Virus record (IMG/VR): IMGVR_UViG_3300032516_000001
Coordinates: 1-64,000 of that record
Length of the DNA stretch: 64,000 bases
Strand: one strand, 5' to 3'
Shown here: in pieces, positions 26,846-54,992 of the stretch
Layout: every line of letters starts with the position of its first letter
How positions within the stretch are numbered: the first letter of the stretch is position 1
Notes under the pieces: generated by a model
Database searches by the model: none
What the model saw: only the letters and a program-made list of their open reading frames with translations
Told to the model about the DNA's origin: nothing
Made by a program: the position numbers and the translations under genes

Positions 26846-27703
26846 ATGCCATTTAGTAAAGAAAAGTTGGATGAGATATTAGACGAAATCGCTAAATATC
26901 AAGTTGACCTAGTCGAGGATCCCACCCTTCCTGAGCATGGCGTTAAGTATTTACAAAGGATTGTTGCTCAATGTCGCAATTATCTGAATAGGACGCAGTT
27001 CTATATTCAATCTGTTGGTAAGGATGAAAAGATACTACGGGTCGATGTCCAACATAAAGAAATGGACATGGATCTGAAATTGAACGGATTATTGGCTGAG
27101 AATCCGATGGTGAGAAAACAGCCATCGATCTCCGATAGACGGGCACTGGCCGCTACGATGCTCAAAGAAGATAACGATGAATTAACTAATTTAAAATTAA
27201 AATTACTGGATGTCCAGGAAACTCTGAAATTGATTAAGATGAAATATGGGGACTTGCAACGAACGAATAATGATATAAAGATGCAGCGCCAATTAGTAAA
27301 AGATGATAAGGAAGGTTGGTTTGGAGAAGGTGGTGGGTACACACCGCCGACGGCTAATGGTGCGGTTCCGGGCGGATTACCGCCCCCAGTGGTAGACCAA
27401 CCTGTAAATCCCACTGACATTTTAGATCCTAGTAGACGTCCGGAAGACTTACCGGAACCACGGGATGCAGTTCACGCTGGGCAAATAGCATCTTTCTTTA
27501 ATTCTCCGCTCAGATCCCATTCGGAATTGCCCAAAAAATATAACGGACTCTTCTGTCCCGAATGTAACGAGCCTCAATTCTACACTCTATCAGGGGTAGT
27601 GTGTAGTAAAGGGCACGGCGGATTCGAGGGTGTACAACGAAAGGAAGACCCACCTGTACCGGCGGCCAGTACTGTCTCATACGAAGATCTACTAAAACTC
27701 TAG
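26846..27703 (+). CDS. Coiled-coil protein with Pro-rich linker and Zn ribbon (possible recombination mediator)
   Basis: Helical N-half, CPEC..C..GH, ends YEDLLKL; upstream of the SSB-like gene and recA. Confidence 0.6.
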   Translation: MPFSKEKLDEILDEIAKYQVDLVEDPTLPEHGVKYLQRIVAQCRNYLNRTQFYIQSVGKDEKILRVDVQHKEMDMDLKLNGLLAENPMVRKQPSISDRRALAATMLKEDNDELTNLKLKLLDVQETLKLIKMKYGDLQRTNNDIKMQRQLVKDDKEGWFGEGGGYTPPTANGAVPGGLPPPVVDQPVNPTDILDPSRRPEDLPEPRDAVHAGQIASFFNSPLRSHSELPKKYNGLFCPECNEPQFYTLSGVVCSKGHGGFEGVQRKEDPPVPAASTVSYEDLLKL

Positions 27704-27726
27704 AACCTTTATAGAACATACCTAGT

Positions 27727-28599
27727 GTGGAACAAAAGCATTGGACGATCTATTGTCACATTCACATTGAATCAAGACGTCGCTACATCGGATTAACATC
27801 CCGTTCAGTGGAACGACGCTGGAGTCAGCATGTGACTCAAGCTAGGTTTTCCAAAAATGGACGATGGCATTTTCCAAATGCCATCCGGAAATACGGAAAA
27901 GATGCGTTTACTCATGAAATATTGGAGATTTGTTACACATTAGAAAAAGCTAATGCTGCTGAAGAGAAGTGGATTGAATTTTATGATACAAGGAATATCG
28001 AGAGAGGATTCAATTTAGCTAAAGGTGGTGAACATATACCGCATCCAATCCGGAAAAACCCCTGGGATGATCCGGAGTATCGAGCCAAAATGGTTGAAGT
28101 GATCAAGACAAGATGGCAGGATCCTGAATATCGTGCAGCTAACTTGGCCATTAGTAGAACTAGACTGGCAAAAGCGACTGAAATCGCGTCATTAAATAAA
28201 GTGCAAAGCAGATCAGAAGTGAGACAGCGATTATCTGAGATTATGAAGCATACAGCCAACACTCCCGAAGGCCGTGCTCAGCGTAAAGCATCGGCCCATC
28301 CTGGTAAAACCTTAAGTCCTGAACATCGCGCCAAAATATCGGCGAATAACGCTATGAAACGTCCAGAAGTTCAGGCAAAAGTGGGCGCCATGTGGCACGA
28401 TGCCGTGAAAAAAGAACGAATCAGGGCTAAAATATCGACTGGTGTCAAAGCTGCATGGAACGACCCTGTAAAAAGTAGACGGATGATGGATGGGATTGCA
28501 GTTGCATGGGCCAAATCACATCCACTAGAGTATGATCAGGATCAAAATCCCAAGTGTAATTTGTTCGAGTTCAAAGCAACGCAAACCGTAAAACCGTAA
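27727..28599 (+). mobile_element. Free-standing GIY-YIG endonuclease, copy 1
   Basis: WTIYCH..RRYIGLT..R..H..AIRKYG..E..GFN plus NUMOD3-like repeats. Confidence 0.9.
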
Positions 28600-28618
28600 A
28601 TGCAAGGATTAAAGTCAA

Positions 28619-29491
28619 ATGAACACCAACATCGCTGAGTTTAGTTTCGACGAAAGCAAAATCGTCAAAACCAACGAAATCGAAATTTTCAAGCAAGATA
28701 AGGGCAAAAAAGATCGAGTATCGGTGGTCGTATTCAAGAAATTCCATGACATGGTCTTGACCAACAAGGCCCAAGAAGCTGGTCGGCCTCTCACCGATCA
28801 GGAAAAAGCTGAAATCATCGCCAAGGTCGATGCAAAGCTAGCTGAACAGCTCAAGAAGAAGCCAGAAGAACTAACCGAAGTCGATAGACTTGATATCAAG
28901 CGTCCCAAATTCTCTGTTGCATACGTGCATTACCGTGATGGTTTAGGATCCGTGCGCTGTCTCAGCACGTATGAAAATGGCCAATTAAGCAAACCCGAAG
29001 TCTGTTGCAAAGAAATGGGTGATGCAACTCAGACTGTTGGAACAATTATTTTGATTTATCCAGTTGACGAACATTTGCAAGCGGACATGGATTTACTCAA
29101 GCAGCATAAATATACAAGCATCCGCATGTGGAGGATGACAGCGAAGAAATTCAAGCAGACCGAGAGCACTTACGTCGGTGCCCGAGCTGAAGGCGTCCAT
29201 GTTCTCGATCTCAAGGTCTCCCTTGAGGGTGATCCGAAATTCCAGAATCAGAAAATTGAAAGTGGGAGTACGGCAGTTTGGGCTCGAGAGGGCGTAGACC
29301 CCGAGATTCGACAGTGGGCCCTGGAGCAGGGGCTCAGAAACTTCAAGCACATCTCGAAGAATCTTGGATATGAAATGGCGCGAGAAAAGCTTATCGAACG
29401 GCTCAATGCGACACCGGCTCAGGTGTCCGCAGAAGCTTCCGCGGAAACTCCACAGCTTAGCACAAATTACGACGAGCTACTTCGCGTATAG
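28619..29491 (+). CDS. Probable single-stranded DNA-binding protein
   Basis: HY....VRC..CC Zn-like motif; tail YDELLRV; next to resolvase and recA (inferred from context). Confidence 0.55.
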   Translation: MNTNIAEFSFDESKIVKTNEIEIFKQDKGKKDRVSVVVFKKFHDMVLTNKAQEAGRPLTDQEKAEIIAKVDAKLAEQLKKKPEELTEVDRLDIKRPKFSVAYVHYRDGLGSVRCLSTYENGQLSKPEVCCKEMGDATQTVGTIILIYPVDEHLQADMDLLKQHKYTSIRMWRMTAKKFKQTESTYVGARAEGVHVLDLKVSLEGDPKFQNQKIESGSTAVWAREGVDPEIRQWALEQGLRNFKHISKNLGYEMAREKLIERLNATPAQVSAEASAETPQLSTNYDELLRV

Positions 29492-29514
29492 CGGCTTCAT
29501 AGGACCGATTCAGT

Positions 29515-30465
29515 GTGAATAAATACTGGACGATCTATTGTCATACGCACATTGAATCGGGACGTCGTTACATAGGTTTGACTGCACAGACGTGGCAGAA
29601 GCGCTGGAAAAACCACGTCTGTGCAGCTAATTCCGCTAGGGGTGGGCGTTGGCATTTTCCTAACGCCATTCGTAAATATGGAAAAGATGCATTTAGTCAT
29701 GAAATACTAGAAGTTTGTACAATATTGGAAAAAGCAAACGCAGCTGAAATCAAGTGGATTGAATTTTATAAGACTCGGGATCCTCAATTTGGATTTAACT
29801 TAGCAAAAGGTGGGGATCACATACCGTCCGAAATTCGGAAGAATCCTTGGAATGATCCTGAATTTCGAGCTAGAGCCTGTTTAGCGGCCAAAGCTAAGTG
29901 GCAGGATCCTAAATATCGTGCAGCTAACTTGGCCATTAGTAGAGCTAGGCTAGCAAAAGCGACTAAGATTGCGTCGTTGAATAAGGTACAAAGTAGACCG
30001 GAGGTAAAACAGCAATTATCCGAGATTATGAAACGTGTGGCTGCCACGCCAGAAGGCCACGCTCAACGAATCGCAGCGGCGCACCCTGGCAAAATTTTAA
30101 CTGCTGAACATCGCGCAAAAATATCAGCTAATGATGCTTCAAAAAGACCAGAAGTAGCAGCAAAGATATCTATCAGTAGTAAAGCGGCGTGGTCTGATTC
30201 TGAAAAACGCAAGCGTATGACGTTAGCATAGGTTGGTAAGAAACTAAGTCCTGAAACTATAGCCAAAATGATTGCTGCAAATACCGGACGTAAATTATCT
30301 GATGAAGCAAAACTTAAGATTTCCGAGGCGTTGACAGGGAGACCGAGACAAACGCATTGTCAAAGAGGGCATGCCATGGAAGGAAATAACATTCTCATTA
30401 CAGGTAATAGACACAGGTGTAGAATGTGCAGGAACATGAGACAAAGACATAGACGAATTAAATAA
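29515..30465 (+). mobile_element. Free-standing GIY-YIG endonuclease, copy 2, with in-frame TAG at 30229-30231
   Basis: Same N-terminal domain; after TAG the frame continues VGKKLSPETIAKMIAANTGRKLS..CQRGH..CRMC, like the C-terminus of copy 3. Confidence 0.85.
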
Positions 30466-30477
30466 TATTAGTTTAAT

Positions 30478-31182: not shown

Positions 31183-31205
31183 GTGTACTATTGAACGGGT
31201 GAACA

Positions 31206-32504
31206 ATGGCAAGTGAAACTGGGTATCATCCAAAACTCCAGAGATTCCGTTCTTCCATTGATGGTCGGAGTAATATACGAGACGTCTTCGTCACTCCTTC
31301 TTTGCATCAAGAGTGCATTAATACTGGTAGCACCGTATTAAATATGCTCATTGGCGGGTCGCGTTTGCCATCGGGCGAATTTGTTTGCCCTGGGTGGCCG
31401 CGAGGAAAAATTATTGAAATATTCGGCCGAGAAAGTTCTGGTAAATCCACTATCGCGCTTACGGCAATGGGTCAAGCTCTATTTAATGGCGGAGCAGAAG
31501 ATGGCTGTGGATTATATGTAGATCTAGAGTGCGCGGTTCAGGATTTTTACTCTATCAAATTAGGAACCGATTTCAGGTCACCTGAAACTGGTGGACATGG
31601 AAGAGCGGTGCGTGCTCAACCTCATACATTTGAAGAGACCGAAACCCTGGTGATGACAGCAGCATTGAATGGAGTCGATCTCGTAGTTATCGATTCTGTG
31701 GCTGGATTGATATCTGGGCGTGAGATTAAACGCGACTTATCAGATGCCGAGCAGAAGCAAGCTGTAGCGGAAGTCCCGAGGTTGATGTCGAATTGGATGC
31801 CCAAATTACAGAGTGTGATATCGCGAACTAAAAGCACGGTTATATTTCTGAATCAAACTCGAGATAAAATTGGGGCCAAGGGTTATACTGAGGAAACTCT
31901 CAAAAGCACAACTGGGGGTAATGCGCTAAAGTTTTGGGCTGCTATTCGCATAATATTGAAACCTAGATCTTCAACTAAGGCTAAGATTTTCAATCCGATA
32001 ACTCGTCAGCAGGAAGACGTTCAGATTGCAACTGAAATCGAGTGCAAGATCATCAAGAATAAGATTGATGCTAAGCAGGGTCACTCAGGGCTGATTACTG
32101 TTAGGTATGGAGTTGGAATCGACGAACTCCGTACTATGCTGAATGTGGGAGAAGCATACAAAGTCATTAAGAAGACCGGCAGTTGGTATGTATTCGAATC
32201 TCCAAATACAGGAGGGGTAATCAAAGCGGCTGGCATGGAAAAATTCAGACTAATGCTTCAAAAAGATGAAGCAATGCTAGCCGACTTCTTATCTATTTGC
32301 ACCGATCATGTTGTTCAGGGATATCGATTGATTGATGAAGATACTCTATCAAATTTAGCTGAACATGCTGTAACTAAACATGAAAAAGACGATGAAGATG
32401 AGGAGGATAGTAGTTCACCTGAAGAAAGAGATGCGACTCAAGAGGAAATAGAGGAGGCTGGTGTAGCGGTTTCAACCCCGAACATTGACGCGTCGGACGT
32501 GTGA
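31206..32504 (+). CDS. recA: RecA/UvsX-like recombinase
   Basis: GWPRGKIIEIFGRESSGKST, VIDSVA, FLNQ.R, TTGGNALKF, IKNK. Confidence 0.95.
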   Translation: MASETGYHPKLQRFRSSIDGRSNIRDVFVTPSLHQECINTGSTVLNMLIGGSRLPSGEFVCPGWPRGKIIEIFGRESSGKSTIALTAMGQALFNGGAEDGCGLYVDLECAVQDFYSIKLGTDFRSPETGGHGRAVRAQPHTFEETETLVMTAALNGVDLVVIDSVAGLISGREIKRDLSDAEQKQAVAEVPRLMSNWMPKLQSVISRTKSTVIFLNQTRDKIGAKGYTEETLKSTTGGNALKFWAAIRIILKPRSSTKAKIFNPITRQQEDVQIATEIECKIIKNKIDAKQGHSGLITVRYGVGIDELRTMLNVGEAYKVIKKTGSWYVFESPNTGGVIKAAGMEKFRLMLQKDEAMLADFLSICTDHVVQGYRLIDEDTLSNLAEHAVTKHEKDDEDEEDSSSPEERDATQEEIEEAGVAVSTPNIDASDV

Positions 32505-32568
32505 ACCATCAATTGGTTTCATAATCATAACTGGGGTAATTAATATAACTTTTATACACCATTTTAAT

Positions 32569-34338
32569 ATGGTATCATTCGGCGAAAAATTTTGGGGACT
32601 TCAACTAATTTCAAAAGTTGAAGTTACAAATGGGTCACATCAAAAACTAGTATGGGTTTGTAATTGTGGAAGGGAAACAAATATAGAAGTAAAAAGGGTA
32701 ACACATGGAGGTGCTAAATCGTGTGGAAGATGTAATGAAATATCAAAAGAGGAGATGACTGGACGTAAATTTGGGCATTTACAAATGAAGAATCCAGAAG
32801 CAATACTTCCTGGATCAGGGAAAAATATAACATGGATTTGTGATTGCGGTAGAGAAACAGAAACTAAAATATGTTTAGTAATTAACGGTAATACTAAATC
32901 GTGTGGAAGATGTAATGAAATATCAAAAGAGGAGATGACTGGACGTAAGTTCGGCAAACTTCAAATAAAAGTTCCTGAAACGATAAAACCAGGTTCCCAT
33001 ACAAGAACAACTTGGATCTGTGATTGTGGTAGAGAAACAATTGTTGAAATAAAACTGGTAACATCCGGAAATACTAAATCATGTGGTAGGTGTAACGAAG
33101 TATCAAAAGAGGAGATGTCTAAAAGGAAATTTGGACATCTCAGAATGAAAGATCCAGACACAGTTCTTCTTGGGTCAAATAAAAAGAAAATTTGGATTTG
33201 TGATTGTGGGCAAGAAATAAAAAGAGGAATTTTTAGTGTTACTTCTGGTAACACTAAATCATGTGGTTTTTGTTATTCCAAGGCCTTTTCATGGTGGGAT
33301 GAAAATAGAGAAATTATAAGATCCCTAAGGTGCCCAATCGATCCGGCCAATGTGCCAGATGGTTTTATTGTTCTCCAAACTATTAAGAATACGAAATCGA
33401 GATTTCTGTCTATATGCCCAGCATGTGGTGACAAACATTCATCAAAATGGGGGGATATAAGACAAGGTAGAGGTATTACGTGCGGATGTACTTATAATGG
33501 GTCTTCTCTAAATTCCGGAATAGTATCCTTTATTCGTTCCTTTGGGTTATCTGTAGTTACAGAATATAAGGTTGATGGGTTAAAGTATGATGTTTTTGTT
33601 CCGGATAAAAATTTATTGATAGAGATGAATGGTTTAAAATGGCACTCTGCTGATGGAGCAAAACAAAGAGATACTCAAAAATTTAAGAATGCGATCGAAT
33701 CTGGATATCAATTCATGATGATATTTGAAGATGAATGGAAAACAGGACGAATTAAAAATACGATAGTGAAATCCATTGGGGTAGATTGTTCAATTTCGAC
33801 TCGCCCCTCGAAATGTCTTTTAAAACAGATAAACACTATTGAAGCGAATCGATTTTACGATAAATTTCATTACATAGGTAAATGTAATCCGACTAATAAT
33901 TATGGGGCATTTTTCAATGATAAGTTAATTGCATGTATATCATTTGGAAGACCAACAAGACAAAATTCAAAATTTGAATATGAATTGCTTAGAATGGCAT
34001 CCGACCCAATTTGTAGAATACACGGAATCTGGACAAAGTTATTATCAGTATTCATAAAAGATAAATCTCCATTTTCCATAGTTTCTTTCTCGGATAATCG
34101 CCTATTTTCAGGTGATGTTTATACAAAAATGGGTTTTATTTTAAATGGTCTGGTAAAACCAGATTACTATTGGACTAACGGGTATAAAAGATTTCATAAA
34201 TCAACCATGAGGAAAAAAGAGAGCGAAAAGAACACCGGTATGACGGAAACAGAAATTAGAAAGTTACAAGGATACGATAAGATATGGGATTTAGGAAAAA
34301 AACGGTGGGCGTATGGCTCTTTCTCCGATCAAAATTAG
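32569..34338 (+). CDS. Multidomain endonuclease: CDCG repeats, PD-(D/E)XK (DUF559/Vsr-like) domain, GNAT/Mom-like C-terminal domain
   Basis: Four W.CDCG..TKSCG repeats; YDVFVPDKNLLIEMNGLKWH..EDEW; HYIG..ELLR..IVSFSD..G.VY..MGF. Confidence 0.75.
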   Translation: MVSFGEKFWGLQLISKVEVTNGSHQKLVWVCNCGRETNIEVKRVTHGGAKSCGRCNEISKEEMTGRKFGHLQMKNPEAILPGSGKNITWICDCGRETETKICLVINGNTKSCGRCNEISKEEMTGRKFGKLQIKVPETIKPGSHTRTTWICDCGRETIVEIKLVTSGNTKSCGRCNEVSKEEMSKRKFGHLRMKDPDTVLLGSNKKKIWICDCGQEIKRGIFSVTSGNTKSCGFCYSKAFSWWDENREIIRSLRCPIDPANVPDGFIVLQTIKNTKSRFLSICPACGDKHSSKWGDIRQGRGITCGCTYNGSSLNSGIVSFIRSFGLSVVTEYKVDGLKYDVFVPDKNLLIEMNGLKWHSADGAKQRDTQKFKNAIESGYQFMMIFEDEWKTGRIKNTIVKSIGVDCSISTRPSKCLLKQINTIEANRFYDKFHYIGKCNPTNNYGAFFNDKLIACISFGRPTRQNSKFEYELLRMASDPICRIHGIWTKLLSVFIKDKSPFSIVSFSDNRLFSGDVYTKMGFILNGLVKPDYYWTNGYKRFHKSTMRKKESEKNTGMTETEIRKLQGYDKIWDLGKKRWAYGSFSDQN

Positions 34339-35491: not shown

Positions 35492-35495
35492 TATC

Positions 35496-38992: not shown

Positions 38993-39049
38993 AGGGTGAA
39001 ATGAAGGTTCACGAACTCGTATCTCAATTGTCAAAATTTGATTCTTCGG

Positions 39050-40256
39050 TGAAGCGGTGAGTACCATATGTGTGTGCGCAGCAGGGCACGCTTTCGACGG
39101 CGAGAAAGGTGGTTGCCCGATGTGTGTTGATAGCAAGACGGAGCCGCGGGAGGGATAGGCGATGGACGACAAGGGACGTATTCACCAGTTGACTGAGGAA
39201 GAACACGCCGCGCTGATAGCCAAAATCGAGGCCGGCTCCAAGCCGCGCATGGTTCCAGTGCCGAGCGAATCGGTGGGCAAGATCATGGCGCAGAGTCGGC
39301 ACGAACTCCAGGCACTACACGGACCCGTGACATGCCCGGAGTGCGCTCGAATCGGTTTCGACTCCTGTATGCCGATGGGTCGTGGGTGTCTATGCCCAGA
39401 GTGCGAAGAGGAGCAGCCATGAGCGAGCAGAACGGAAGGACGAGTGCAGACCCACGAGAGGTAGCCGCCCTGCGCGCCGAGGTCGAGCGGCTGCGCATGA
39501 AGGCCGGGCGACTACAGGCCCGCGTCTCCGTGTTCATGCAGGCGATGGGCTGGCTCGCCCGCAACGGGCACCAGGTACGAGCCCAGCGCTGGATTGCGCG
39601 CGCCGACGAGTCTGCGGCTGACGTGCGGCCCGAGGACTTCGTTGTGGCGAAGCCATGTGCCCTCGCCACGCCCAAGGCGCCGGCCGAACTCGTCCGCCAG
39701 TCGCCGCCCGCTGCGGTGCGCGATGAGAAAGGCGGTGCGCGATGACGCCGCCGAGCAACGAAGTCTGGCTATTCCCGACACGACCCGGTGAGCAAGAGGA
39801 CAGGATGGGGCGCAAGGGGTGGACAGCCCTTTGGGTGTCGTATGGAAAGCCGCGCGCACAGTGCAGTTTCACGCAACTGGCCAAACTGCAATCGCAGACC
39901 GGGTGGTCCGGTAAGAAGGTGATCGTGCTCGACAAGGACCCAACATGAAGACGACGGCGAAGACGCAGCGCATCGATGCCGCAATCAGAAGGCTATGCAG
40001 ACGTGACGCGCGGCTCACCAAGCTGGAGCCAGAGTTGGAGCGCGCCTTCCTCGTACGCGAGGAGCTGGCCAGCCTACACAAGGCCGCCGCTTTGGTGCTG
40101 CTGAGGTATCGAAAGGAACGAAACCTAGCTACGGCCATGGCTGCGCTGGACGAAGCGGACGAGGCAGCAGGCGCCACGCTCGCCCGCCAGTCGCCGCCCG
40201 CTGTGCCGACCACGAAAGGAGCCGCAAAGTGAAAGTCTACGTAGCGAGCAGTTGGA
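39050..40256 (+). mobile_element. High-GC foreign insertion carrying five small phage-like genes
   Basis: Abrupt switch to GC-rich sequence; overlapping ORFs 39057..39158, 39162..39422, 39419..39745, 39742..39948, 39945..40232; truncated ORFs at both edges. Confidence 0.8.
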
Positions 40257-40924: not shown

Positions 40925-41182
40925 TTGAAGCGCGTTATGGTAGAGTTATCCCCACTCATGAATGGTGCATCAAAATCCGAGTCCGAAATTAAACTATTCT
41001 ATAGTATAGAATACTATGATGAAGAAGGACCAAATATTAAACATGCGTTTATGACAGAATCTGAAATGATGCAGTTATTGGATAAATTTGTGCAAAATGG
41101 AGTGAAAGCCAAAATTTATAGATTATCTACATTACCCTCTGATGTACAATCGGAGAGTGAAAAAGTCAAAGAAATCAGTTGA
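40925..41182 (+). CDS. Hypothetical protein
   Basis: ORF only. Confidence 0.5.
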   Translation: MKRVMVELSPLMNGASKSESEIKLFYSIEYYDEEGPNIKHAFMTESEMMQLLDKFVQNGVKAKIYRLSTLPSDVQSESEKVKEIS

Positions 41183-42074
41183 AACGATTACTAGAGAAAT
41201 TGCTGATTGGCGTCGATTTATTAATACGTCGTCTAGTAATATCCGCAGACTTAGCGCCGTCCAATTTACCTTCACGACGCCATCTAGTTATTCGTTTCCT
41301 GTTATTGATTAAATCTAACTCCATTCTGCTTAATGATCGAAATTTTTTCATCTTATGACTAACGCAATTATCACAATACTTTGCATATCTTTGACTTGCG
41401 AATCGATCAGATAGTGGCCCACCACACTTTTTACACAATGGTGGAACCCAAGGGTCAGCCGGCGCTTTATACTCGAAGCATGGAACCATTAATGGCCTGA
41501 TCATGTCGAGAAATCTTGCTGCATTTTTATGTTGTAAAACTAATATAGGCTGACCACGCCAGTGATTGATAAAGTTATGAATACCTATATCATCAAATTT
41601 GTCCGACAATAATTGTACATCTTTTTCAGTAAACCCATTCGTGTGTAATTTAACTTCTAGTCTTCCACGTGGGGTTGAAACATTACCATCACCCATATGC
41701 CAGTTAGCAAGTATAACTGGATCCGATAAATTTATATTCTCCGGTACAATCTTCTTTCCGTTAGGATACCATCTTTGTCTTTCTGACACAAATTCGATAT
41801 ATGAATAGGTCCATATTTTCACTTCATTCCTTTGATCATAAATTTTCATGTTGTTGCCAACATGTTCATCATCGAATAATTTCTTTAGCGAGTATATCCA
41901 ATCCGTATGGCCTACGCATTGTCCCAAAGAAAATGAAGCAGAGTGCATAGATTGCTGGATGTAAGATCCATCGCCAAGTAGACACCCATCCAATGCCGCC
42001 AGAAGTTTCGGACTGAGGGACACTGTCTTTAAACTCTTTCGTGGCCCATCGATATACCACCCAGGAGGCTTCAT
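41175..42074 (-). CDS. Free-standing two-motif LAGLIDADG endonuclease
   Basis: LDGCLLGDGS..WYPNGKKIVP..LANWHMGDG..LHTNGFT..YK. Confidence 0.9.
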   Translation of the reverse strand: MKPPGWYIDGPRKSLKTVSLSPKLLAALDGCLLGDGSYIQQSMHSASFSLGQCVGHTDWIYSLKKLFDDEHVGNNMKIYDQRNEVKIWTYSYIEFVSERQRWYPNGKKIVPENINLSDPVILANWHMGDGNVSTPRGRLEVKLHTNGFTEKDVQLLSDKFDDIGIHNFINHWRGQPILVLQHKNAARFLDMIRPLMVPCFEYKAPADPWVPPLCKKCGGPLSDRFASQRYAKYCDNCVSHKMKKFRSLSRMELDLINNRKRITRWRREGKLDGAKSADITRRRINKSTPISNFSSNRFN

Positions 42075-43640: not shown

Positions 43641-44093
43641 TTAATTACCTTGAAAATTTAAAGCTTTGTATATATCTTCTGCCTTAGCTTGATCTGGATC
43701 AACAGTAACAACTTCATCTCCTGGATAAGCAAAAATTGCATAGTTATCCCACCATATTTTTCCAATATCTTTGTTTGGATCTATAGGGATGACTTTTGAT
43801 GTGTCTTCGATCTCCCATCCATCATCCATAGCGGCATCGAAGTCAAAGTCGTCCGGTACTTCAACGACAAGAGAGAAATCTTCGTCCGTGTCGTATCCTA
43901 AAACATATGGCGCAAGTTTGTCGTACATATTATATACTTGATCTAACATATCTTGAACAAACCCGGGGTCTGACCAGTTATCGTGTGGATGATAAGTATC
44001 GGTAAAGAAACCAAAGAATTTATGCCCAGGACTGGGTTTAATTTTCCTGGGATGATTCAGCAATAAAGCTATCTTCAATAAATTTGGTTTCAT
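43641..44093 (-). CDS. Hypothetical acidic protein
   Basis: Probable start MKPNLLKIA at 44093, overlapped by the end of GIY-YIG copy 3. Confidence 0.6.
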   Translation of the reverse strand: MKPNLLKIALLLNHPRKIKPSPGHKFFGFFTDTYHPHDNWSDPGFVQDMLDQVYNMYDKLAPYVLGYDTDEDFSLVVEVPDDFDFDAAMDDGWEIEDTSKVIPIDPNKDIGKIWWDNYAIFAYPGDEVVTVDPDQAKAEDIYKALNFQGN

Positions 44094-45102
44094 ATTTACC
44101 AACATTCTTTTGTTGCGTACGATATTGTTTTCTACGCAAACTGTGACAAGTTCTACAAATTCTTGTGCCATTAACAGTATACGCATTTTCTAATAGATGT
44201 CCCCTTTTGCAATATACCTGCTTCGGCCTGTTTTTGAGCGCCATTGCAACTTTGGCTATATGTTCTGGACTGTGTCTTTTACCTCTATGCGCATCGCCTA
44301 TTTTAGCCCGATGTTCTGGACTAAATTTTATGCCTTTTCTGGATGCTGCCGATTTAGCAATAGAATCCGCGTTTCTGGGTTTGCCTTTTTGAGATAGAGA
44401 TAATTTTTTTCTAGTTTCAGGGCTTGCCGATTTTCCTTTTCCTGCAACCGAAAGTTTAGCACAGTGATCCGGTTTCAAAGGAATGCCCTTAAGGACGGCG
44501 GAAGCGTGCTCACGAAATCCCGGTTTATCCCACTTGGCTTTTGCTGCTAAACAACACTTAGTCCTGTATTCAGAATTTTGCCATTCGGTCTTGGAAATAG
44601 CACTGCGTTTTTCCTTCGACTCCATGGTATTCATAGCTGCTCTTAAACACGCTCTAGCCTCGGGGGTTTGACCCGCATCAATAAATCTTTGTAAATTATT
44701 GGCTCGATATTCAGGATCTTGCCACTTAGCTTTGGCTGCTAAACATGCTTTTTCTCGATATTCAGGACGATTCCAAGGGTTTGTATTTTGGTGCGGTGTG
44801 TGCTCGCCACCTTTTGCTAAGTTAAATCCAAATTGTGGGTTTCTCGTGTTATGAAATTTAATCCATTTCTCTTCAGCTAAATTTGCTGATTCTAATGTAT
44901 CGCACACTTCTAAAATTTCATGAGAAAATGCGTCCCTACCATACTTACGGATGGCATTTGGGAAGTGCCAACGTCCGTTTTTTGAATACTTAGCCGCATA
45001 GACATGATCATTCCATCGTTGCATCATAGTCCGTTTAGTTAGACCGATGTAACGACGTCCAGATTCTGTATGAATATGACAATAGATCGTCCAATGATTC
45101 AC
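44038..45102 (-). mobile_element. Free-standing GIY-YIG endonuclease, copy 3
   Basis: WTIYCH..RRYIGLT; NUMOD3-like repeats; CKRGH..CRTC. Confidence 0.9.
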
Positions 45103-45125
45103 ATTAGAACAATCGTATAAAAGCG

Positions 45126-45542
45126 CTAACGAGTTCGACCCGGAGTCCCATCAAAATTTCCATGAAGAACGTAATACATGGGCAACGAATTGGCCTCGAG
45201 TCTCTTCATCACTCGAGCTGAATCATCCCAATCGGATTCCACTACGGGAGTGGTATTCGCCAAAGCAATAAGATTTGGATCATCAGTTATTCTCAATAGA
45301 TCTTTCTTAGCTTGTGATGTTCTAGTCAATACAGCATAAACCTGGCCATATGTCATAAGATCAAGTTTGCATTTACCCGGGTATCCAGGAGCTGCTATCT
45401 CCCAGAACATATTGTTATTAGAATGATCTCCAGTACATTTTGTACAACAGTTGTGATCCGGATTTACCGGAGCATCCATACAGATTTCAGGTATCTGACA
45501 GGGATTGCATTGACAGGGATTACAATTGCATGTACAGGCCAT
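45126..45542 (-). CDS. Protein with metallothionein-like Cys-rich N-terminus
   Basis: MACTCNCNPCQCNPCQ..CCTKC. Confidence 0.65.
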   Translation of the reverse strand: MACTCNCNPCQCNPCQIPEICMDAPVNPDHNCCTKCTGDHSNNNMFWEIAAPGYPGKCKLDLMTYGQVYAVLTRTSQAKKDLLRITDDPNLIALANTTPVVESDWDDSARVMKRLEANSLPMYYVLHGNFDGTPGRTR

Positions 45543-50296: not shown

Positions 50297-50305
50297 ATTG
50301 CCTAT

Positions 50306-50563
50306 ATGTTTATCATAAGATATATTAAAACATGCATTTTAAGAATTAGGAACTCTATTGAAGATATTCTCAATGGAGGACAAGCATTTGGTGATGAATA
50401 TGACGATCTTATTGACCTCGATGATGGTGATATCGATGGTGAACCGACGCCTCCTAGGTATCCATGTCCAAAATGTGGTAAGGAAACCAAAGAGCACCAA
50501 ATTTCAGGTACTCGAATTTGTTCATGTTGTCGTCAAATATCTGTTCATGTTGTCGTCAAATAG
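50306..50563 (+). CDS. Small Zn-ribbon protein
   Basis: Shares PRYPCPKCGKETKE module with 203..646; TAAATT-N6-ATG. Confidence 0.6.
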   Translation: MFIIRYIKTCILRIRNSIEDILNGGQAFGDEYDDLIDLDDGDIDGEPTPPRYPCPKCGKETKEHQISGTRICSCCRQISVHVVVK

Positions 50564-50565
50564 TT

Positions 50566-51078
50566 TCAGGAGATTAAATTAAGAATTCTGGCCAATACTG
50601 CAGCTAATGCATATCTGAATTCAGGGACTCCTGGTAATTCGCTGTCATTCAATCCTAATAGAATTTTTGCCATATCATCGATTTTACTTCTAAATTGAAA
50701 TACCACATACGTTCCTAATGGTAACATTGCAGTTAAATCTGTCGGAAGATTAGTTGCTTTCGATATTTCAAAGAATAAATTAAGAATCTCTTGTAGTTTT
50801 TCCTTGATTTGAGTATTTGCTTCATTTGGTAGTCTTGGATATTGATCTACCAAAGCAGTATTGAATCTATCAGGCGCAAGAGTTGGCATCCAAATCGCAA
50901 TCGGATTTTTTACAGAATAATCATTTACTATTCCAATACCGGATATTGTGGGAAGTATTGTCTGCATTATGTAGCATGGAATGCATATTTTCAATGCTAC
51001 TTCTCGTTCTTCCTTATCATAGTTAACTATTGATATTCCACCAAATTCAAATAGCGGAAAATTATCTTGGGGATCCAT
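50566..51078 (-). CDS. Hypothetical protein
   Basis: TACGAT box upstream; LPLGT..F motif weakly ThyX-like but unconvincing. Confidence 0.6.
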   Translation of the reverse strand: MDPQDNFPLFEFGGISIVNYDKEEREVALKICIPCYIMQTILPTISGIGIVNDYSVKNPIAIWMPTLAPDRFNTALVDQYPRLPNEANTQIKEKLQEILNLFFEISKATNLPTDLTAMLPLGTYVVFQFRSKIDDMAKILLGLNDSELPGVPEFRYALAAVLARILNLIS

Positions 51079-51084
51079 ACTCTA

Positions 51085-52161
51085 TTATCGTACACCCATA
51101 GCTTGCAGCATGTTTTGCCGAAATTCTGGATCCGCCCAGCGAGCCTTCATAGCTTCTGATATCTTCATCTTGGTTTCCGGATCATGTTTTTTCATTTTTG
51201 CCCAATAAGCTTTCGAAGCTTTCAGTATTTTGGCCCTAATTTCTGGGCTATGCGGTTTCGCTTTCATTTTATTGACGGTGGCGATTTTGTCTCGATAACT
51301 TGGGTCGGACATTCTCTTTTCCAAAGAATTCATAATCTTCTGCCGAAATTCTGGATTTGTCCAACGAATTTTCATGGCTTCCGATATCTTCATCTTAGTT
51401 TCCGGATCATGTGGTTTTGCTTTAATTTTATTAGAAGCCGCTATTCTCTCCCTGACATCAGGACTATTTAGTTTTTTCTTAATTAAATCTGAAGTTTTTT
51501 GTCGAAATTCAGGATCAGACCACGATTTCTTTAAGGCTTCCGATACCTTTGCAATATGCTCTGGAGAATGCATCTTCCCTTTCCTGGCTTTGGACATTCT
51601 TGCGCAAAATTCTGGGGTTCGTATTTTTCCTTTGTTTCCATTGGATATTTTTTCTTTGACCTCTGATCTAGCATTGACTTGTTTAGAGATCATGGACATC
51701 TTAGCTACAAATTGCGGATCGCTCCACATCTCTTGACTAGCCTTGGACCTTCGAGCCTGAACTAAGGGATCTTTGAGCGATGCATTGACCGAAGCTGTAA
51801 CTCTAGCTCTAAAATCTGGGTTATTCCACGGATTCTTCCTAATCGGATGCGGTTTATGTTCACCTCCCCTTGCCAAATTAAACCCAAATTGCGGATCTCT
51901 AGTTTTATAAAATTCAATCCATTTTTCTTCGGCTAAATTGGCCGCTTCTAATGTGTTACATACTTCCAAAACTCCATGTGAAAATGCATCTCTACCGTAT
52001 TTACGGATGGCGTTAGGAAAATGCCAGCGACCTCCTTTAGTTGATTTGGCAGCACATATATGGTTCCGCCATCTCTTCTCCATAGTCTGAGAAGTCATCC
52101 CAATATAACGGCGCCCAGAATCAATATGTGTATGATAATAGATCGTCCAGTGTTTATTCAC
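51085..52161 (-). mobile_element. Free-standing GIY-YIG endonuclease, copy 4
   Basis: WTIYYH..RRYIGMT; duplicated HDPETKMKISEAMK.RW..PEFRQ repeats. Confidence 0.9.
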
Positions 52162-52184
52162 ACTGGAAACGTCCTATAAAAGTT

Positions 52185-54992
52185 TCAAAGCCCCAGTAGA
52201 TCTACCAATACTCTAAAACGATCAGGGTCCACCATCACTCCTTCAGATTCTGATAAAATAATCTTACCATCATGCCCCAGAATCCTTAAAGCATGAGATC
52301 CTTCAGCTAGAATACAGATAGCATACAATTTCTTCATCGAATTTTCGGTCAAAACGGTTCTGATAGTCCATCTTAATACAGAACCACCACCGTTTCCATT
52401 GCCGGGAACGGGCTTTACTTCTTGAGCTTGAACCGCGGATTCAGTCGGTATCTTTTCTTCCGATTTTGGTTCAGATTCCGATACAGGTTCAGGTTTCGGG
52501 GCTAATTCTATAGGTCCGATATCGATATCCAAATCACCATTAACTGGAAGTATGGCCTCCGTTGATTCTAACTCGACATTGGTGTCTAATTTAGACTCGG
52601 GATCAAGTTCAGATTGAGGCTCCGGTTCAGGTGTCGGTGTAACCTCTGTCTGAGGATTTGATGACTTAGGTCCCCCATCAATCTTTCGCCATATATATGC
52701 CTGCAAGAAATCGGGAATTTTCTGGTACACTCTTCCATTATCAAAATATTGGTTGCCTTTCAGCTTACCAGCATAATTTCCTTTTTCGTCTAGGTCTTTA
52801 GGTCTGGGAACAGCTCCGTCGACCATATGGAAGAAATCAAACCTAGCACGCCAGTGAACATCAACTCCGGGCTCTGTATCGAGCGGCACCACCCATTGAC
52901 GCCCATGAGCTTTATGCATCGCCCCTGGGAGAACCATCCACTCATGGAGTTTCGGAACGATTTCCATCAAGAATTGGGGTCTAATTTCATAGACAACTTC
53001 ATCGTGTACCGTTAGCACGTAGCGAACTCTGTCCTCCCATTTATTCAATCGTATTTGTTTATCCACATAACACATTGCTAATTTCAAGACATCTGCTGAT
53101 GTGGATTGAATAGTGTAATTGATAGCACAACGTTCAGCCTTTGCCCTAACGGCTTTAATCGGTGAATCAATCGTCGGAATCGGGATTCTACGACCAAATG
53201 CCGTATAAATGCACTTATGTTTCTTGGTAAATTGCTTTTGATAATCAACATATCCCATCAAAACTGGGACATCATTTCGCAAGTTATTCATGTGACGTTG
53301 AGCATCCTCGATTGAACACCCAACATTGCGCATTATGGCGCCAGCTCCACCACCATATATGAATGCGAAATTGCAGCGCTTGCCGCGATTTCGTTCATCT
53401 TTACTAATATTTTTCTTCCCGAATAGTGTACGCGATGTGATTGCGTGTACGTCTCCATCACCATGTAAGAAGGATTCCGTCCAAACCGGATCCCCGGACA
53501 TATTAGTTACTACACGTAATTCCTCACCAGCATAATCAATTTTGACTAGGATATACCCAGGTCTAGCCGATATGCAACTCCGTATCTGCTTAAATAATTC
53601 TGGTTTATCATCATCAGAATCGCGAGGGATCCCTTGAAAATTGACTCCTGAAAATCCATCTTTTATATCACCAGCAGTAGCCGAAAGACGAGTTGTGTCA
53701 GTACCGAGCTGATTGAAATTCGGTCTAACATCGCCATATATATCATGTGATTTGAGGAATTTCTCGATGAATGATCCTCCCATCTTTTCATAATGACGGT
53801 ATTCGAGGAGAAATTCGAATATGCTAGCAGTCTTGGATCTATGCGTTATCTTAGTCTTCTCTCCATAGTCTCTATGGAGAGTTTTGACCATTTCGTCTTT
53901 TAAGGAGTACTGCTTCGGTTTTCCGTCTTCACCGATTTCAACTTCATGCGGCTCATCGTCGCCATCTGAATCATCATTATTGTGGCTATAATAATCCCCA
54001 CCAGGGTTTAGCATTTCTTTGGTGGGTTTTAATTTCATACCTTCCGGATCTGTATGGAAGGCTTTCGATAGTTGTGTTACAGAACCAACATTCAATGTCA
54101 ACCACTTACCGGTATTACCAGTTCTTGATTCAATAAATCGCCGGATCAAATCGCCGGTCTCTTGCATGGCCTCCTTACATTCAGCATGAAGTTGATTGAC
54201 TCTATCAACATCTATATGAACGCGATTACGCTCCATTTTCCGGAGCACATTACAGAAGGCTCTTTCCAAATCATAGATTGTTGGATCGAATCCTTGTAAT
54301 TTATCTTTCAGAGTATGATATAATTTATAAGTAAAAATGCCATCAGAACAGCCGTACTCGAGGCCTTCCTTAGGATGCAATAATGCAAAGTTGTATCTCT
54401 GCTTTGCTCGTTTTAATTGTTCTTTTTTCTCTGCTGTAAACAACTCATCAAGTTCCACCATGTCGATACCATAGTGAATCTTGGTGAGAGGCTTCAATCC
54501 CGCCGGGGATGTCTTAATTGGGTTAATGATTTTAGCTAAGAAATATGTATCTTCATATTGATCTATCTTCCAATATTCTTTACCGGTGACTGGATATAAG
54601 AATTCACAATCGAATTTTGAGTTATGGAAGATGGCTCTTGCATTACTATTTATTAATTTGGCTAATAGCTCCCAAGCTTCATCCCATGGTAAATTCCCAG
54701 AATCTTCCGGCTCATGAGAGAGTGGAACATAATACCCATGCTGTCCATCAAATGAAATGCATACGCCGACTATTCTATCTATGGTTCTAATTCCAAATTT
54801 GGTTTTCTTTCCATCTTCAAAATGGCTATCTGAATAAATTCTATTGTCGACACCAGTGGTTTCTGTATCGATCGAGTACAACCCTCTTTTTATACAGGTA
54901 TCTACGAGTTGACCAAGTTGATCGAGAGTCTGTACTAAATGGAAGCTATAATATTGAAACCAGTCGCGCTGTATAGTTATTCTATCATCCAT
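52185..54992 (-). CDS. polA: Family A DNA polymerase (3'-5' exonuclease plus polymerase; no 5' nuclease)
   Basis: DTETTG, FHNSKFD, YGCSD; motif A DYAGEELR, motif B RGKRCNFAFIYG, motif C VHDE. Confidence 0.95.
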   Translation of the reverse strand: MDDRITIQRDWFQYYSFHLVQTLDQLGQLVDTCIKRGLYSIDTETTGVDNRIYSDSHFEDGKKTKFGIRTIDRIVGVCISFDGQHGYYVPLSHEPEDSGNLPWDEAWELLAKLINSNARAIFHNSKFDCEFLYPVTGKEYWKIDQYEDTYFLAKIINPIKTSPAGLKPLTKIHYGIDMVELDELFTAEKKEQLKRAKQRYNFALLHPKEGLEYGCSDGIFTYKLYHTLKDKLQGFDPTIYDLERAFCNVLRKMERNRVHIDVDRVNQLHAECKEAMQETGDLIRRFIESRTGNTGKWLTLNVGSVTQLSKAFHTDPEGMKLKPTKEMLNPGGDYYSHNNDDSDGDDEPHEVEIGEDGKPKQYSLKDEMVKTLHRDYGEKTKITHRSKTASIFEFLLEYRHYEKMGGSFIEKFLKSHDIYGDVRPNFNQLGTDTTRLSATAGDIKDGFSGVNFQGIPRDSDDDKPELFKQIRSCISARPGYILVKIDYAGEELRVVTNMSGDPVWTESFLHGDGDVHAITSRTLFGKKNISKDERNRGKRCNFAFIYGGGAGAIMRNVGCSIEDAQRHMNNLRNDVPVLMGYVDYQKQFTKKHKCIYTAFGRRIPIPTIDSPIKAVRAKAERCAINYTIQSTSADVLKLAMCYVDKQIRLNKWEDRVRYVLTVHDEVVYEIRPQFLMEIVPKLHEWMVLPGAMHKAHGRQWVVPLDTEPGVDVHWRARFDFFHMVDGAVPRPKDLDEKGNYAGKLKGNQYFDNGRVYQKIPDFLQAYIWRKIDGGPKSSNPQTEVTPTPEPEPQSELDPESKLDTNVELESTEAILPVNGDLDIDIGPIELAPKPEPVSESEPKSEEKIPTESAVQAQEVKPVPGNGNGGGSVLRWTIRTVLTENSMKKLYAICILAEGSHALRILGHDGKIILSESEGVMVDPDRFRVLVDLLGL

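What the first reader, a model, noticed from the sequence alone, without database searches (positions are those of the whole stretch)
27683..52202. Four GIY-YIG genes each start exactly 23 nt after another gene's stop codon, three of them after GAKCTACT-N7-stop
Seen: the junctions are TAG-AACCTTTATAGAACATACCTAGT-GTG (27701-27729), TAG-CGGCTTCATAGGACCGATTCAGT-GTG (29489-29517), TAG-CGCTTTTATACGATTGTTCTAAT-GTG (45128-45100, minus) and TGA-AACTTTTATAGGACGTTTCCAGT-GTG (52187-52159, minus). All spacers are 23 nt, share YTTYATA at positions 4-10 and YART at the end, and precede a GTG start. Three unrelated upstream genes end GATCTACTAAAACTCTAG, GAGCTACTTCGCGTATAG and GATCTACTGGGGCTTTGA ([D/E]-L-L-x-hydrophobic-stop, always coded CTA-CTN); copy 3 lacks this. 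The 3' ends differ; copies 1 and 4 run into the next gene's promoter and copy 3 into its coding sequence. Known: free-standing GIY-YIG genes (T4 seg type) usually home to one cognate site. Inference: this is a multi-site element with a defined left end that lands just after stop codons or supplies the last codons of its host gene.
Basis: partly seen in the sequence, partly recalled or inferred. Interest (0 to 1): 0.9.

Follow-up and report, generated by a model that had tools for sequence, protein, structure and literature searches.

The report
Homing-endonuclease cassettes that begin at stop codons
Four selfish nuclease genes in this giant-phage genome belong to a widespread family whose mobile unit starts with the stop codon of whichever gene lies upstream, followed by a fixed 23-base leader that hides the nuclease's own start codon in an RNA hairpin.

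Summary
Four paralogous I-TevI-like GIY-YIG homing-endonuclease genes (HEGs) each start 23 nt after an upstream gene's stop.

It is a property of the whole family, not four coincidences. In about 110 related loci from uncultured jumbo phages, the conserved leader motif sits exactly 3 nt after a long ORF's stop in 48 of 1433 stops, against 0-3 at any other offset. That stop is TAG in 39 of 43 cases, against 24% background.

Empty sites and a recent intragenomic exchange show that the unit is stop + leader + nuclease domain, with a sharp left end at the stop codon.

The last 5-6 leader bases pair with the codons just before and at the conserved Trp (TGGAC), burying an SD-less ATG/GTG start in a covarying hairpin. 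This resembles T4 I-TevI/segB/mobE control.

The [D/E]-L-L tails are native to the host proteins, so the element does not supply them. They fit a family-wide bias for a hydrophobic residue at position -3, and more weakly -4, before the stop.

No TIRs or TSDs were found. How the cassette lands on stop codons, why TAG is preferred, and what the YTTTATGG core does are unresolved.

Verdict: a real new variant of free-standing HEG architecture.

The parts
26834..27703 (+). Host gene upstream of copy 1 (289 aa, no family hit). Its native tail is ...SYEDLLKL, with stop TAG at 27701-27703.
   Evidence: The orthologue in L061 (46% id) ends ...SYDDLLS-TAG with no HEG after it.
27704..27726 (+). Copy 1 leader (23 nt, core CTTTATAGAAC). 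The hairpin with the Trp codon region is weak in this copy.
27727..28599 (+). Copy 1 GIY-YIG HEG (290 aa, GTG start).
28619..29491 (+). Host gene upstream of copy 2 (290 aa). Tail ...NYDELLRV, stop TAG.
   Evidence: Orthologues in L073, L049 and L061 also carry a HEG after them.
29492..29514 (+). Copy 2 leader (23 nt). The start-burying hairpin spans about 29499-29538.
   Evidence: z = -2.35; inverted repeat I3
29515..30465 (+). Copy 2 GIY-YIG HEG, cut by an in-frame TAG at 30229-30231 where a near-identical contig has CAG. This gives 238 aa plus a C-terminal remnant running to 30465.
45126..45542 (-). Host gene upstream of copy 3 (138 aa). Stop TAG at 45126-45128; no DLL tail.
45103..45125 (-). 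Copy 3 leader (23 nt). Hairpin about 45085-45114.
44038..45102 (-). Copy 3 GIY-YIG + NUMOD3 HEG (354 aa).
52185..55028 (-). Family-A DNA polymerase, host gene upstream of copy 4. Native tail ...VLVDLLGL, native stop TGA at 52185-52187.
52162..52184 (-). Copy 4 leader (23 nt). Hairpin about 52138-52177, with the start codon on the 5' side of the stem at the edge of the loop.
   Evidence: z = -2.47
51085..52161 (-). Copy 4 GIY-YIG + NUMOD3 HEG (358 aa). Its last codons hold a TG-TACGAT box (51087-51094), 8 nt before the next gene's ATG.
50566..51078 (-). Conserved neighbour of PolA. It directly follows PolA in the HEG-less relatives L033 and L034.

Best explanation
The four genes are copies of a Seg-like, free-standing GIY-YIG homing-endonuclease cassette that has spread to many gene junctions in a 241.6-kb uncultured jumbo phage and its relatives.

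Shown:
- The conserved unit begins at a stop codon, usually Y-TAG-A, which terminates whichever gene lies upstream.
- It continues with a fixed leader (N3, core YTTTATGG/YTTTATAGG, about 8 more nt) that lacks a Shine-Dalgarno sequence, and then an ATG/GTG start.
- The last 5-6 leader bases pair with the codons just before and at the invariant Trp (TGGAC...), so the start codon sits inside a hairpin.
- The 23-nt distance is therefore the length of the cassette's own leader.
- The cassette fills the whole intergenic space, and signals for the next gene lie in its 3' end.
- The DLL tails belong to the host proteins.

Inferred:
- The HEG has no promoter or terminator of its own and is co-transcribed with the upstream gene.
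- The hairpin, the missing SD and the frequent GTG start keep nuclease synthesis very low.
- The little translation that occurs depends on ribosomes that have just finished the upstream gene. This would put the position of that stop under selection.
- A cassette that carries its own stop codon, and rebuilds the next gene's signals, can sit in a genome whose genes abut or overlap without damaging either neighbour. This would explain why only such junctions persist.
- New sites arise by rare ectopic repair or recombination. The nuclease domain with its leader is also exchanged between resident copies.
For: Gene identity:
- Pfam GIY-YIG and NUMOD3 hits.
- An AlphaFold model whose N-terminal domain matches the I-TevI catalytic domain (TM 0.79-0.80, rmsd 2.3 A).

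Family-wide anchoring on the stop:
- In 45 of 67 unique leaders the longest upstream ORF ends exactly 3 nt before the core (41 TAG, 3 TGA, 1 TAA).
- 12 more end at back-up stops inside the leader (+2, +8, +11).
- Offset enrichment is 48 against 0-3.
- TAG is used in 39/43 cases against 179/736 in the background, p = 8e-19. The window's own genes use TAG in 25 of 97.

Empty sites:
- PolA site: L033 and L034.
- Copy-1 site: L061.
- ...FTL* gene: three filled sites, all TAG; five empty sites, four TGA and one TAG, with an identical C-terminus.
- ...AQM[ED]D* gene: filled site TAG; empty sites TGA x3 and TAA.

Left end of the unit: L051 and L108, both from the window's genome, are about 100% identical from ATT-TAG to about +270 nt of the ORF, and about 50% identical on either side.

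Hairpin:
- The only consensus structure found.
- 92.5% of cells are paired, against 15-45% with slid partners. 12 cells show double changes, reached by 0 of 500 shuffles.
- Register-shifted perfect stems occur in other members.
- Mean unpaired probability around the start is 0.335, against 0.474 in 300 control genes (p = 2e-16).
- SD-like motifs occur in 15% of leaders against 31% of controls.

No sigma-70-like promoter or terminator lies in the leaders.

The HEG life cycle is visible: a nonsense allele of copy 2, a decayed HEG in L083, and a leader without a HEG at L058:4720.

The T4 paradigm of hairpin-controlled, promoter-less HEG cassettes with host promoters embedded in them is described in PMC2988022.
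Against: - No transcript, ribosome or cleavage data exist; the phage is uncultured.
- The function of the most conserved part, the YTTTATGG core, is not explained by the hairpin.
- Termination-reinitiation is almost abolished at about 20 nt in E. coli and H. volcanii (PMC10666635), so coupling to the annotated stop would be very weak.
- Selection alone does not obviously explain why the junction is exact in so many different genes, nor why TAG rather than TAA or TGA.
- A few non-HEG genes carry the same stop-N3-core arrangement (L029:2421, L081:322, L051, L093). The core may therefore be a native signal or recombination site rather than purely part of the cassette.
- Many loci are related, so the p-values overstate independence.
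Confidence: 0.6

Rival explanations
1. Target-site model. The nuclease family recognises or cleaves a motif at gene ends, and inserts there. The motif would be GAKCTACT-N7-stop in this genome, or more generally NTN-NTN-N5-Y-stop. The conserved left flank would then be the retained half of the homing site.
For: The upstream flank carries a signal beyond the stop. Residue -3 is hydrophobic in 70% against 27% (p = 2e-8). Residue -4 is hydrophobic in 53% against 30%. The base at -1 is a pyrimidine in 81% against 49% (p = 3e-5). Three copies in this genome share GAKCTACT with CTA-CTN codons. Copies 2, 3 and 4 cluster in the nuclease-domain tree although they sit at different sites.
Against: The tails are native and functionally conserved in HEG-less orthologues, with different codons. 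No k-mer is enriched upstream of the stop across the family. Copies 3 and 7 lack the 8-mer. The hydrophobic bias may instead reflect the [V/I]-M-x-x-stop type of gene end that is common in these phages (13 of about 97 window genes). GIY-YIG specificity normally lies in the C-terminal domain, which differs between copies.
Confidence: 0.3
2. Promoter model. The core (TATG / TATAG) is a phage promoter. The HEG would be transcribed on its own, late, from just after the upstream stop. The constant distance would simply be promoter plus 5' UTR in a compact genome.
For: phiKZ late promoters are a bare TATG with the start at the G (PMC4666361). The window phage has TG-TAYRRT boxes 5-11 nt before many starts, including TATAGG before 22504. 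A second leader class (GGTAGAGTT-N5-ATG) looks like an extended -10 for a leaderless mRNA, and in L004, L013 and L048 it lies inside the hairpin loop, as in I-TevI. The core also precedes a conserved non-HEG gene in L029, L051 and L093.
Against: The motif occurs before no other gene in the 64-kb window. Common variants (TGTGG, CATGG, AATGG, TATCGG) fit neither TANNNT nor TATG. A transcript starting at the G of TATG would still contain the whole hairpin. A promoter does not explain the TAG bias or the in-frame use of the stop. No evidence was sought that this phage has a phiKZ-type RNA polymerase.
Confidence: 0.25
3. Read-through gate. TAG is a deliberately suppressible stop. When it is read through, by a phage suppressor tRNA or by near-cognate decoding, the ribosome translates eight leader codons and melts the hairpin. 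It then terminates at a TGA that overlaps the HEG start (ATGA/GTGA), the optimal geometry for reinitiation.
For: In 22 of 27 unique 23-nt leaders, the upstream frame stays open after the stop and ends at a TGA overlapping the start. The 24-, 27- and 60-nt leaders are in frame with the HEG itself. The window encodes a bona fide tRNA with anticodon UUA (15604-15679; 64 bits). Copy 2 carries TAG where a sister contig has CAG. Stop-codon suppression is proposed to time late phage genes (bioRxiv 10.1101/2021.08.26.457843). Overlap is what reinitiation needs.
Against: Copy 1 (GTG-GAA) and the 26- and 35-nt leader classes lack the overlapping TGA. Copy 4 starts from TGA. A UUA anticodon prefers UAA, yet TAA is almost never the leading stop. 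No suppressor tRNA was found in the other loci. There is no sign of in-frame TAG/TAA recoding in the window. An A after the start (Lys/Asn second codon) is common for other reasons, and the sequences are related.
Confidence: 0.15
4. Recombination-motif model. Stop-N3-core is a short repeated junction sequence, analogous to PeSLs of T4-type phages. ORF cassettes, mostly HEGs, are shuffled between such junctions by homologous recombination.
For: L023 has the motif on both sides of the HEG. There the HEG's own TAG is followed by 23 nt and the next gene's ATG, and the HEG-less relatives keep one copy before that gene. Leader-only junctions exist (L058:4720, L081:322). c5 and c6 show an exchange with a breakpoint at the motif. 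PeSL precedent: PMC2839356, PMC4122927.
Against: The motif is only about 20 nt long. It is absent from the empty PolA, copy-1 and ...FTL* sites. It is almost exclusively HEG-associated in the sampled DNA: about 44 of 48 occurrences.
Confidence: 0.2

Closest known systems
Free-standing Seg-type GIY-YIG homing endonucleases of T4-like phages (segA-G)
   Same: An I-TevI-like N-terminal nuclease domain with a variable C-terminal NUMOD3-type DNA-binding region. The genes sit between host genes, are variably present among relatives, have no promoter of their own, and carry host signals in their 3' end (PMC2988022).
   Different: At most 32% identity to any cultured-phage protein, and none in 185,579 GTDB genomes. 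At least 7 copies occur in one genome. All share a conserved leader that starts at the upstream stop codon. T4 seg/mob genes have unrelated, idiosyncratic junctions, often overlapping the upstream ORF.
Hairpin translational control of I-TevI, I-TevII/III, segB and Aeh1 mobE
   Same: An RNA stem-loop occludes the translation-initiation region of a nuclease gene that is read through from upstream genes (PMC2988022).
   Different: Here there is no SD to sequester. The stem is formed by the leader and the gene's own codons just before and at the Trp, and the start codon itself is enclosed. An internal late promoter that would free the start is not demonstrated for the 23-nt class.
nrdA/mobE stop-start overlap (UAAUGA) and termination-reinitiation coupling
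   Same: Nuclease expression is tied to termination of the upstream gene. After read-through of the first stop, 22 of 27 leaders give an ATGA/GTGA overlap.
   Different: The annotated stop is 23 nt away, a distance at which coupling is nearly lost in tested species (PMC10666635).
PeSL mobile regulatory cassettes of T4-type phages
   Same: A short conserved intergenic regulatory motif marks the boundaries of shuffled ORFs (PMC2839356).
   Different: PeSLs are sigma-70 promoter plus terminator units of about 50-100 bp flanking ORFans. This motif is about 26 nt, contains a stop codon, has no promoter or terminator consensus, and is tied to one nuclease family.

Membership tests
GIY-YIG homing endonuclease (I-TevI / Seg type) | GIY-YIG catalytic domain recognised by the curated profile | tested here: met
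   PF01541 scores 33-39 bits against a cut-off of 22.6 in all four copies.
GIY-YIG homing endonuclease (I-TevI / Seg type) | Catalytic-domain fold and conserved motif residues (Tyr of GIY and YIG, Arg, Glu, Asn) | tested here: met
   The model (pLDDT 86) matches 1MK0/1LN0 with TM 0.79-0.80. Invariant across 22 members: Y8, Y19, G21, R30, E78, N95. Residue-by-residue equivalence to I-TevI was not enumerated.
GIY-YIG homing endonuclease (I-TevI / Seg type) | Separate C-terminal DNA-binding module (NUMOD3, zinc finger or HTH) | tested here: met
   NUMOD3 is above cut-off in copies 3 and 4. Cys/His clusters occur in the tails of copies 2 and 3. Copy 1 has no hit. Copy 2 is truncated in this genome.
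GIY-YIG homing endonuclease (I-TevI / Seg type) | Free-standing position with presence/absence polymorphism among related genomes | tested here: met
   Empty sites in L033, L034 and L061, and at two further gene junctions.
GIY-YIG homing endonuclease (I-TevI / Seg type) | Site-specific cleavage of the HEG-less allele and biased inheritance | not testable with these tools
   Needs protein and synthetic empty-site DNA, or phage crosses.
T4-type hairpin-regulated HEG | Conserved RNA structure occluding the initiation region | tested here: met
T4-type hairpin-regulated HEG | Shine-Dalgarno sequence inside the stem | tested here: not met
   No SD in the four leaders. SD-like motifs occur in 9 of 59 family leaders.
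T4-type hairpin-regulated HEG | Late promoter placed so that late transcripts lack the 5' arm | tested here: inconclusive
   No sigma-70 match. An extended -10-like GGTAGAGT lies inside the loop, but only in the 35-nt leader class. No transcript data.
Transposon / IS-like multi-site element | Terminal inverted repeats and target-site duplications; a transposase | tested here: not met
   No shared TIR or TSD around the four cassettes. The only ORF is the nuclease.
Termination-reinitiation coupled gene pair | Stop and start overlap or lie within a few nt | tested here: not met
   The distance to the used stop is 23 nt. An overlap exists only with the next in-frame TGA, after hypothetical read-through.

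The most novel reading that the evidence does not exclude
The stop codon is a functional part of a portable left end. The cassette brings a suppressible TAG that closes any host gene. Synthesis of the nuclease is gated by occasional or late-phase read-through of that TAG, for example by a phage suppressor tRNA such as the tRNA(UUA) at 15604-15679. Read-through drives the ribosome through eight leader codons, opens the hairpin, and ends at a TGA overlapping the HEG start, where it reinitiates. The same stop+leader module lets the family colonise many gene ends in one genome.
Probability: 0.15. Interest if true: 0.85.

Novelty: new variant of a known kind. Interest (0 to 1): 0.62.

Why it matters
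Free-standing homing endonucleases are usually described as one gene at one site, with ad hoc junctions. Here a whole family shares a standard front end: a stop codon, an SD-less leader, and a hairpin built partly from its own first codons. The family occupies dozens of different gene junctions, with at least seven in one genome.

This suggests a general solution to how a selfish nuclease gene can enter a genome with almost no intergenic space, without harming its neighbours or over-expressing a toxic enzyme.

It also gives a sequence signature that finds the left boundary of such cassettes to the nucleotide in metagenomes. Finally, it offers a compact, testable translational control element, possibly linked to stop-codon suppression.

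Tried and rejected
- General phage promoter: the motif occurs nowhere else in the window.
- Canonical sigma-70 promoter or intrinsic terminator in the leaders: none.
- Tandem duplication of [gene + HEG] to explain copies 1 and 2: the two upstream proteins are not detectably homologous except for the last 8 residues, and L061 has both genes with no HEG between them.
- Leader as a copy of an internal HEG segment (the W-I-E-F-Y-D-T-R coding region looked similar): best matches are no better than shuffled leaders, 9.56 against 9.70 of 14.
- Leader coding in the HEG frame: many variants have TAG, TGA or TAA there.
- Family-wide k-mer upstream of the stop, such as CTAC or GATCTAC: not enriched.
- TIRs or TSDs: none shared.
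- Split-gene / split-intein arrangement: the neighbours are separate genes in HEG-less relatives.
- Genome-wide TAG/TAA recoding in the window: no signal.
- Single-sequence searches for diverged orthologues of the copy-1 and copy-2 host genes in IMG/VR found only identical contigs. Orthologues came instead from the flanks of the metagenome loci.
- Sequence search of PDB: no hit. The structural search did hit.

Full report
OBSERVATION

The four junctions read exactly as reported: stop, 23 nt, GTG. A strict pattern for stop-N3-YTTYATA-N9-YART-GTG finds only these four places in 64 kb. The ORFs are:
- 27727-28599 (+)
- 29515-30231 (+)
- 44038-45102 (-)
- 51085-52161 (-)

Each carries a GIY-YIG domain above Pfam's threshold, and copies 3 and 4 also carry NUMOD3. 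They are paralogues with a well conserved nuclease domain and divergent C-terminal halves. An AlphaFold model of copy 4 (pLDDT 86) superposes on the I-TevI catalytic domain with TM 0.79-0.80. DNA similarity between the copies starts at about the stop codon and not before.

CONTEXT

The window is the first 64 kb of a 241,648-bp IMG/VR contig. It has no close relative among cultured phages. It carries family-A PolA, UvsX-, RuvC- and DnaB-like genes and RtcB, and many other homing-endonuclease genes of HNH and LAGLIDADG types. The same contig has at least three more members of this GIY-YIG family outside the window. The family was not found in 185,579 bacterial and archaeal genomes. It has only distant Seg-like relatives in cultured phages, at most 32% identity.

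THE PATTERN IS FAMILY-WIDE

Scans of IMG/VR and of JGI/ENA metagenomes gave about 110 loci with 82 distinct HEG 5' ends. An alignment of the upstream regions shows one conserved leader: Y-TAG-A-N-C, then YTTTATGG(A/G)AC or YTTTATAGGAC, then about 8 nt ending in CCAGY, then ATG or GTG.

Of 67 unique leaders with a recognisable core:
- In 45, the longest upstream ORF ends exactly 3 nt before the core (41 TAG, 3 TGA, 1 TAA).
- 12 more end at stops inside the leader, such as the TAG of TATAGG, the TGA of TATGAC or the TAA of TTAATGG.
- Only about 7 end upstream of the motif.

The distance from core to start is 20 nt (= 23 nt from the stop) in 35 and 23 nt in 11. The distance from the core to the Trp codon is constant; the start codon moves by whole codons.

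Seen from the other side, among 1433 distinct stops of ORFs of at least 100 codons, the core occurs at offset +3 in 48, and 0-3 times at any other offset from -3 to +15. TAG is the stop in 39 of 43 unique cases, against 24% of background ORFs (p = 8e-19) and 25 of 97 in the window's own genes.

WHAT IS INSERT AND WHAT IS HOST

1. PolA site (copy 4). Two relatives with 58-61% identical polymerases (L033, L034) have PolA followed directly by the homologue of window 50566-51078, with no HEG and no leader-like sequence. Their polymerases end ...VLAELFGI-TGA and ...YLASLYGLG-TAA, against ...VLVDLLGL-TGA in the window. The tail and the stop are native. The insert runs from just after the stop to 6 nt before the next ATG.
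2. Copy-1 site. L061 carries the orthologue of 26834-27703 (46% identity). It ends ...TVSYDDLLS-TAG and is followed by a 78-nt spacer without the motif, then the orthologue of 28619-29491.
3. ...FTL* gene. This gene has a HEG after it in L058, L043 and L083 (decayed there), always with TAG. It has none in five other contigs, one of them from the window's genome. Those show the same C-terminus, with TGA four times and TAG once.
4. ...AQM[ED]D* gene. It is followed by a HEG in L023 (TAG), and by no HEG in L011, L029 and L025 (TGA) or L051 (TAA).
5. Two copies in the window's own genome (L051 and L108). They are practically identical from ATT-TAG through the leader and about 270 nt of the nuclease domain. 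They are unrelated upstream and only about 50% identical in the DNA-binding half.

Together these show that the conserved unit starts at the stop codon. Host C-termini are left intact, and the stop tends to become TAG.

ANATOMY OF THE LEADER

RNAalifold finds a single conserved helix. The 5-6 nt before the start pair with the codon before Trp, the Trp codon and the first base after it (GCTGGA and variants), so the start codon lies in the loop or at the stem edge.
- On 27 sequences, 92.5% of cells are paired, against 15-45% when partners are slid by 1-3 columns.
- Two pairs covary (CG/UA/UG and GC/GU/AU), and no shuffle reaches the observed score.
- Other members keep the hairpin in a shifted register with perfect 8-11 bp stems, or pair the leader with an N-terminal extension (L008, L053, L014, L111).
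- In the window, copies 2 and 4 fold significantly better than shuffles (z = -2.35 and -2.47). There the TATAGG of the core extends the stem by pairing with the Ile-Tyr codons.
- Copy 3 forms the stem, but its energy is not better than shuffles. The stem of copy 1 is weak.

Across the family, the region from -10 to +15 is less accessible than in control genes of the same loci (0.335 against 0.474, p = 2e-16), despite lower GC. SD-like motifs are rarer (15% against 31%), and 15 of 59 starts are GTG or TTG. There is no sigma-70-type promoter or terminator in or before the leaders.

The HEG 3' ends abut or overlap the next gene and carry its signals:
- A TG-TACGAT box 8 nt before the ATG at 51078.
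- An AAGGAG in the last codons of the L058 HEG.

THE DLL TAIL

The [D/E]-L-L tails are native (see above). The orthologues of the copy-2 host gene end ...YDDLIS (L073). The observation does generalise in weaker form. In genes followed by this cassette:
- Residue -3 is L/I/V/M/F in 70% (background 27%, p = 2e-8).
- Residue -4 is hydrophobic in 53% (background 30%).
- The base before the stop is a pyrimidine in 81% (background 49%).

Part of this may reflect a common native gene end in these phages, [V/I]-M-x-x-stop, seen in 13 of about 97 window genes and in several HEG host genes. The shared CTA-CTN codons of the three window copies (CTA is 14% of Leu codons) are not explained. No upstream k-mer is enriched family-wide.

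MECHANISM

Shown:
- The cassette boundary lies at the stop.
- A hairpin encloses the start codon.
- There is no SD.
- The HEG is co-oriented with the upstream gene in essentially all cases.
- No terminator lies between them.

Inferred: co-transcription with the upstream gene and very low translation.

The closest paradigm is T4. There, many seg/mob genes are promoter-less cassettes, hairpins block initiation on read-through transcripts, and host promoters become embedded in the HEG (PMC2988022).

Three points remain open.
1. Function of the YTTTATGG core. It contains the phiKZ-type late promoter tetranucleotide TATG (PMC4666361). In the window it reads TATAGG, like a -10-type box used elsewhere in this phage. 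But its variants fit no single promoter consensus.
2. Why TAG, and why 23 nt. In 22 of 27 23-nt leaders, the upstream reading frame stays open past the stop and ends at a TGA overlapping the HEG start (ATGA/GTGA). The 24-, 27- and 60-nt leaders are in frame with the HEG. The window also encodes a genuine tRNA with anticodon UUA. This makes a read-through gate conceivable. Reinitiation needs overlap and fails at about 20 nt (PMC10666635). However, copy 1, the 26- and 35-nt leaders, the TGA of copy 4, the rarity of TAA and the lack of recoding signals argue against it as a general rule.
3. How new sites are acquired. There are no TIRs or TSDs. Copies 2, 3 and 4, and separately L051 and L108, cluster within the genome although they sit at different sites, while the same site in different phages holds HEGs from different clades. 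A few non-HEG genes carry the same stop-N3-core. In L023 the motif flanks the HEG on both sides. Recombination at the motif, as with PeSLs (PMC2839356), is therefore possible.

VERDICT

The reading as a multi-site element with a defined left end at stop codons is supported. The idea that it supplies the DLL codons is refuted for these copies. This is a new variant of free-standing HEG architecture, with a T4-like logic of translational restraint.

Caveats:
- All evidence is comparative.
- Many loci are phylogenetically related, so significance values are upper bounds.
- Start codons were assigned by proximity to the conserved Trp.
- Background ORFs include some spurious ones.

Noticed in passing
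window 15604-15679 (+): A bona fide tRNA (Rfam 64 bits) with anticodon UUA, an ochre-type suppressor that could read UAA and, by wobble, UAG. The window shows no clear in-frame TAG/TAA recoding.
   Followed up: partly
window 30229-30231: Copy 2 is interrupted by an in-frame TAG where a near-identical contig from another sample (L001) has CAG, giving an intact 316-aa protein there. This is either a decaying HEG or a suppressible codon.
   Followed up: yes
window, e.g. 24799-25167, 25160-25462, 26184-26528, 14900-15244, 15246-15566, 58925-59191: 13 of about 97 ORFs end in [V/I]-M-x-x-stop (DNA GTN-ATG-N6-stop). The next gene's ATG often overlaps the stop. It looks like a signal for the downstream gene embedded in the upstream gene's end. 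The same tails occur on HEG host genes in other loci.
   Followed up: partly
window 1412, 6358, 16903(-), 40889(-), 22504, 56536, 51078(-): TG-TAYRRT boxes lie 5-11 nt before many start codons, and few genes have an SD. This suggests leaderless or very short-leader mRNAs in this phage.
   Followed up: partly
window 2252-3676, 6801-8006, 32485-34338, 55014-56528 (HNH); 41175-42074 (LAGLIDADG): The replication region holds at least five further homing-endonuclease-like genes of other families. One lies next to UvsX and one is divergent from PolA.
   Followed up: no
window 27680-27703, 29468-29491, 52185-52208: The two ~290-aa host proteins end in Y-[DE]-[DE]-L-L-x-x and PolA ends in V-D-L-L-G-L. 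From memory, this is reminiscent of the C-terminal clamp-binding peptides of T4 replication and transcription proteins. It was not tested.
   Followed up: no
L051:2962-3260 vs L108:2962-3254 (same genome, about 148 kb and 214 kb): Stop + leader + nuclease domain are about 100% identical, while the DNA-binding halves are about 50% identical. This is a recent domain-level exchange between two resident HEGs.
   Followed up: yes
L083:1236-1290; L058:4720-4790; L081:322-350: A decayed HEG (its Trp codon is now TAG, followed by an early stop), and complete leaders that now precede non-HEG genes. These are probably footprints of HEG loss.
   Followed up: partly
L014 and L015: Family members sit next to tRNA gene arrays, as segB does in T4.
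   Followed up: no
window 39001-40000: A 1-kb island of 62% GC, in a roughly 41% GC genome, with overlapping ORFs on both strands.
   Followed up: no
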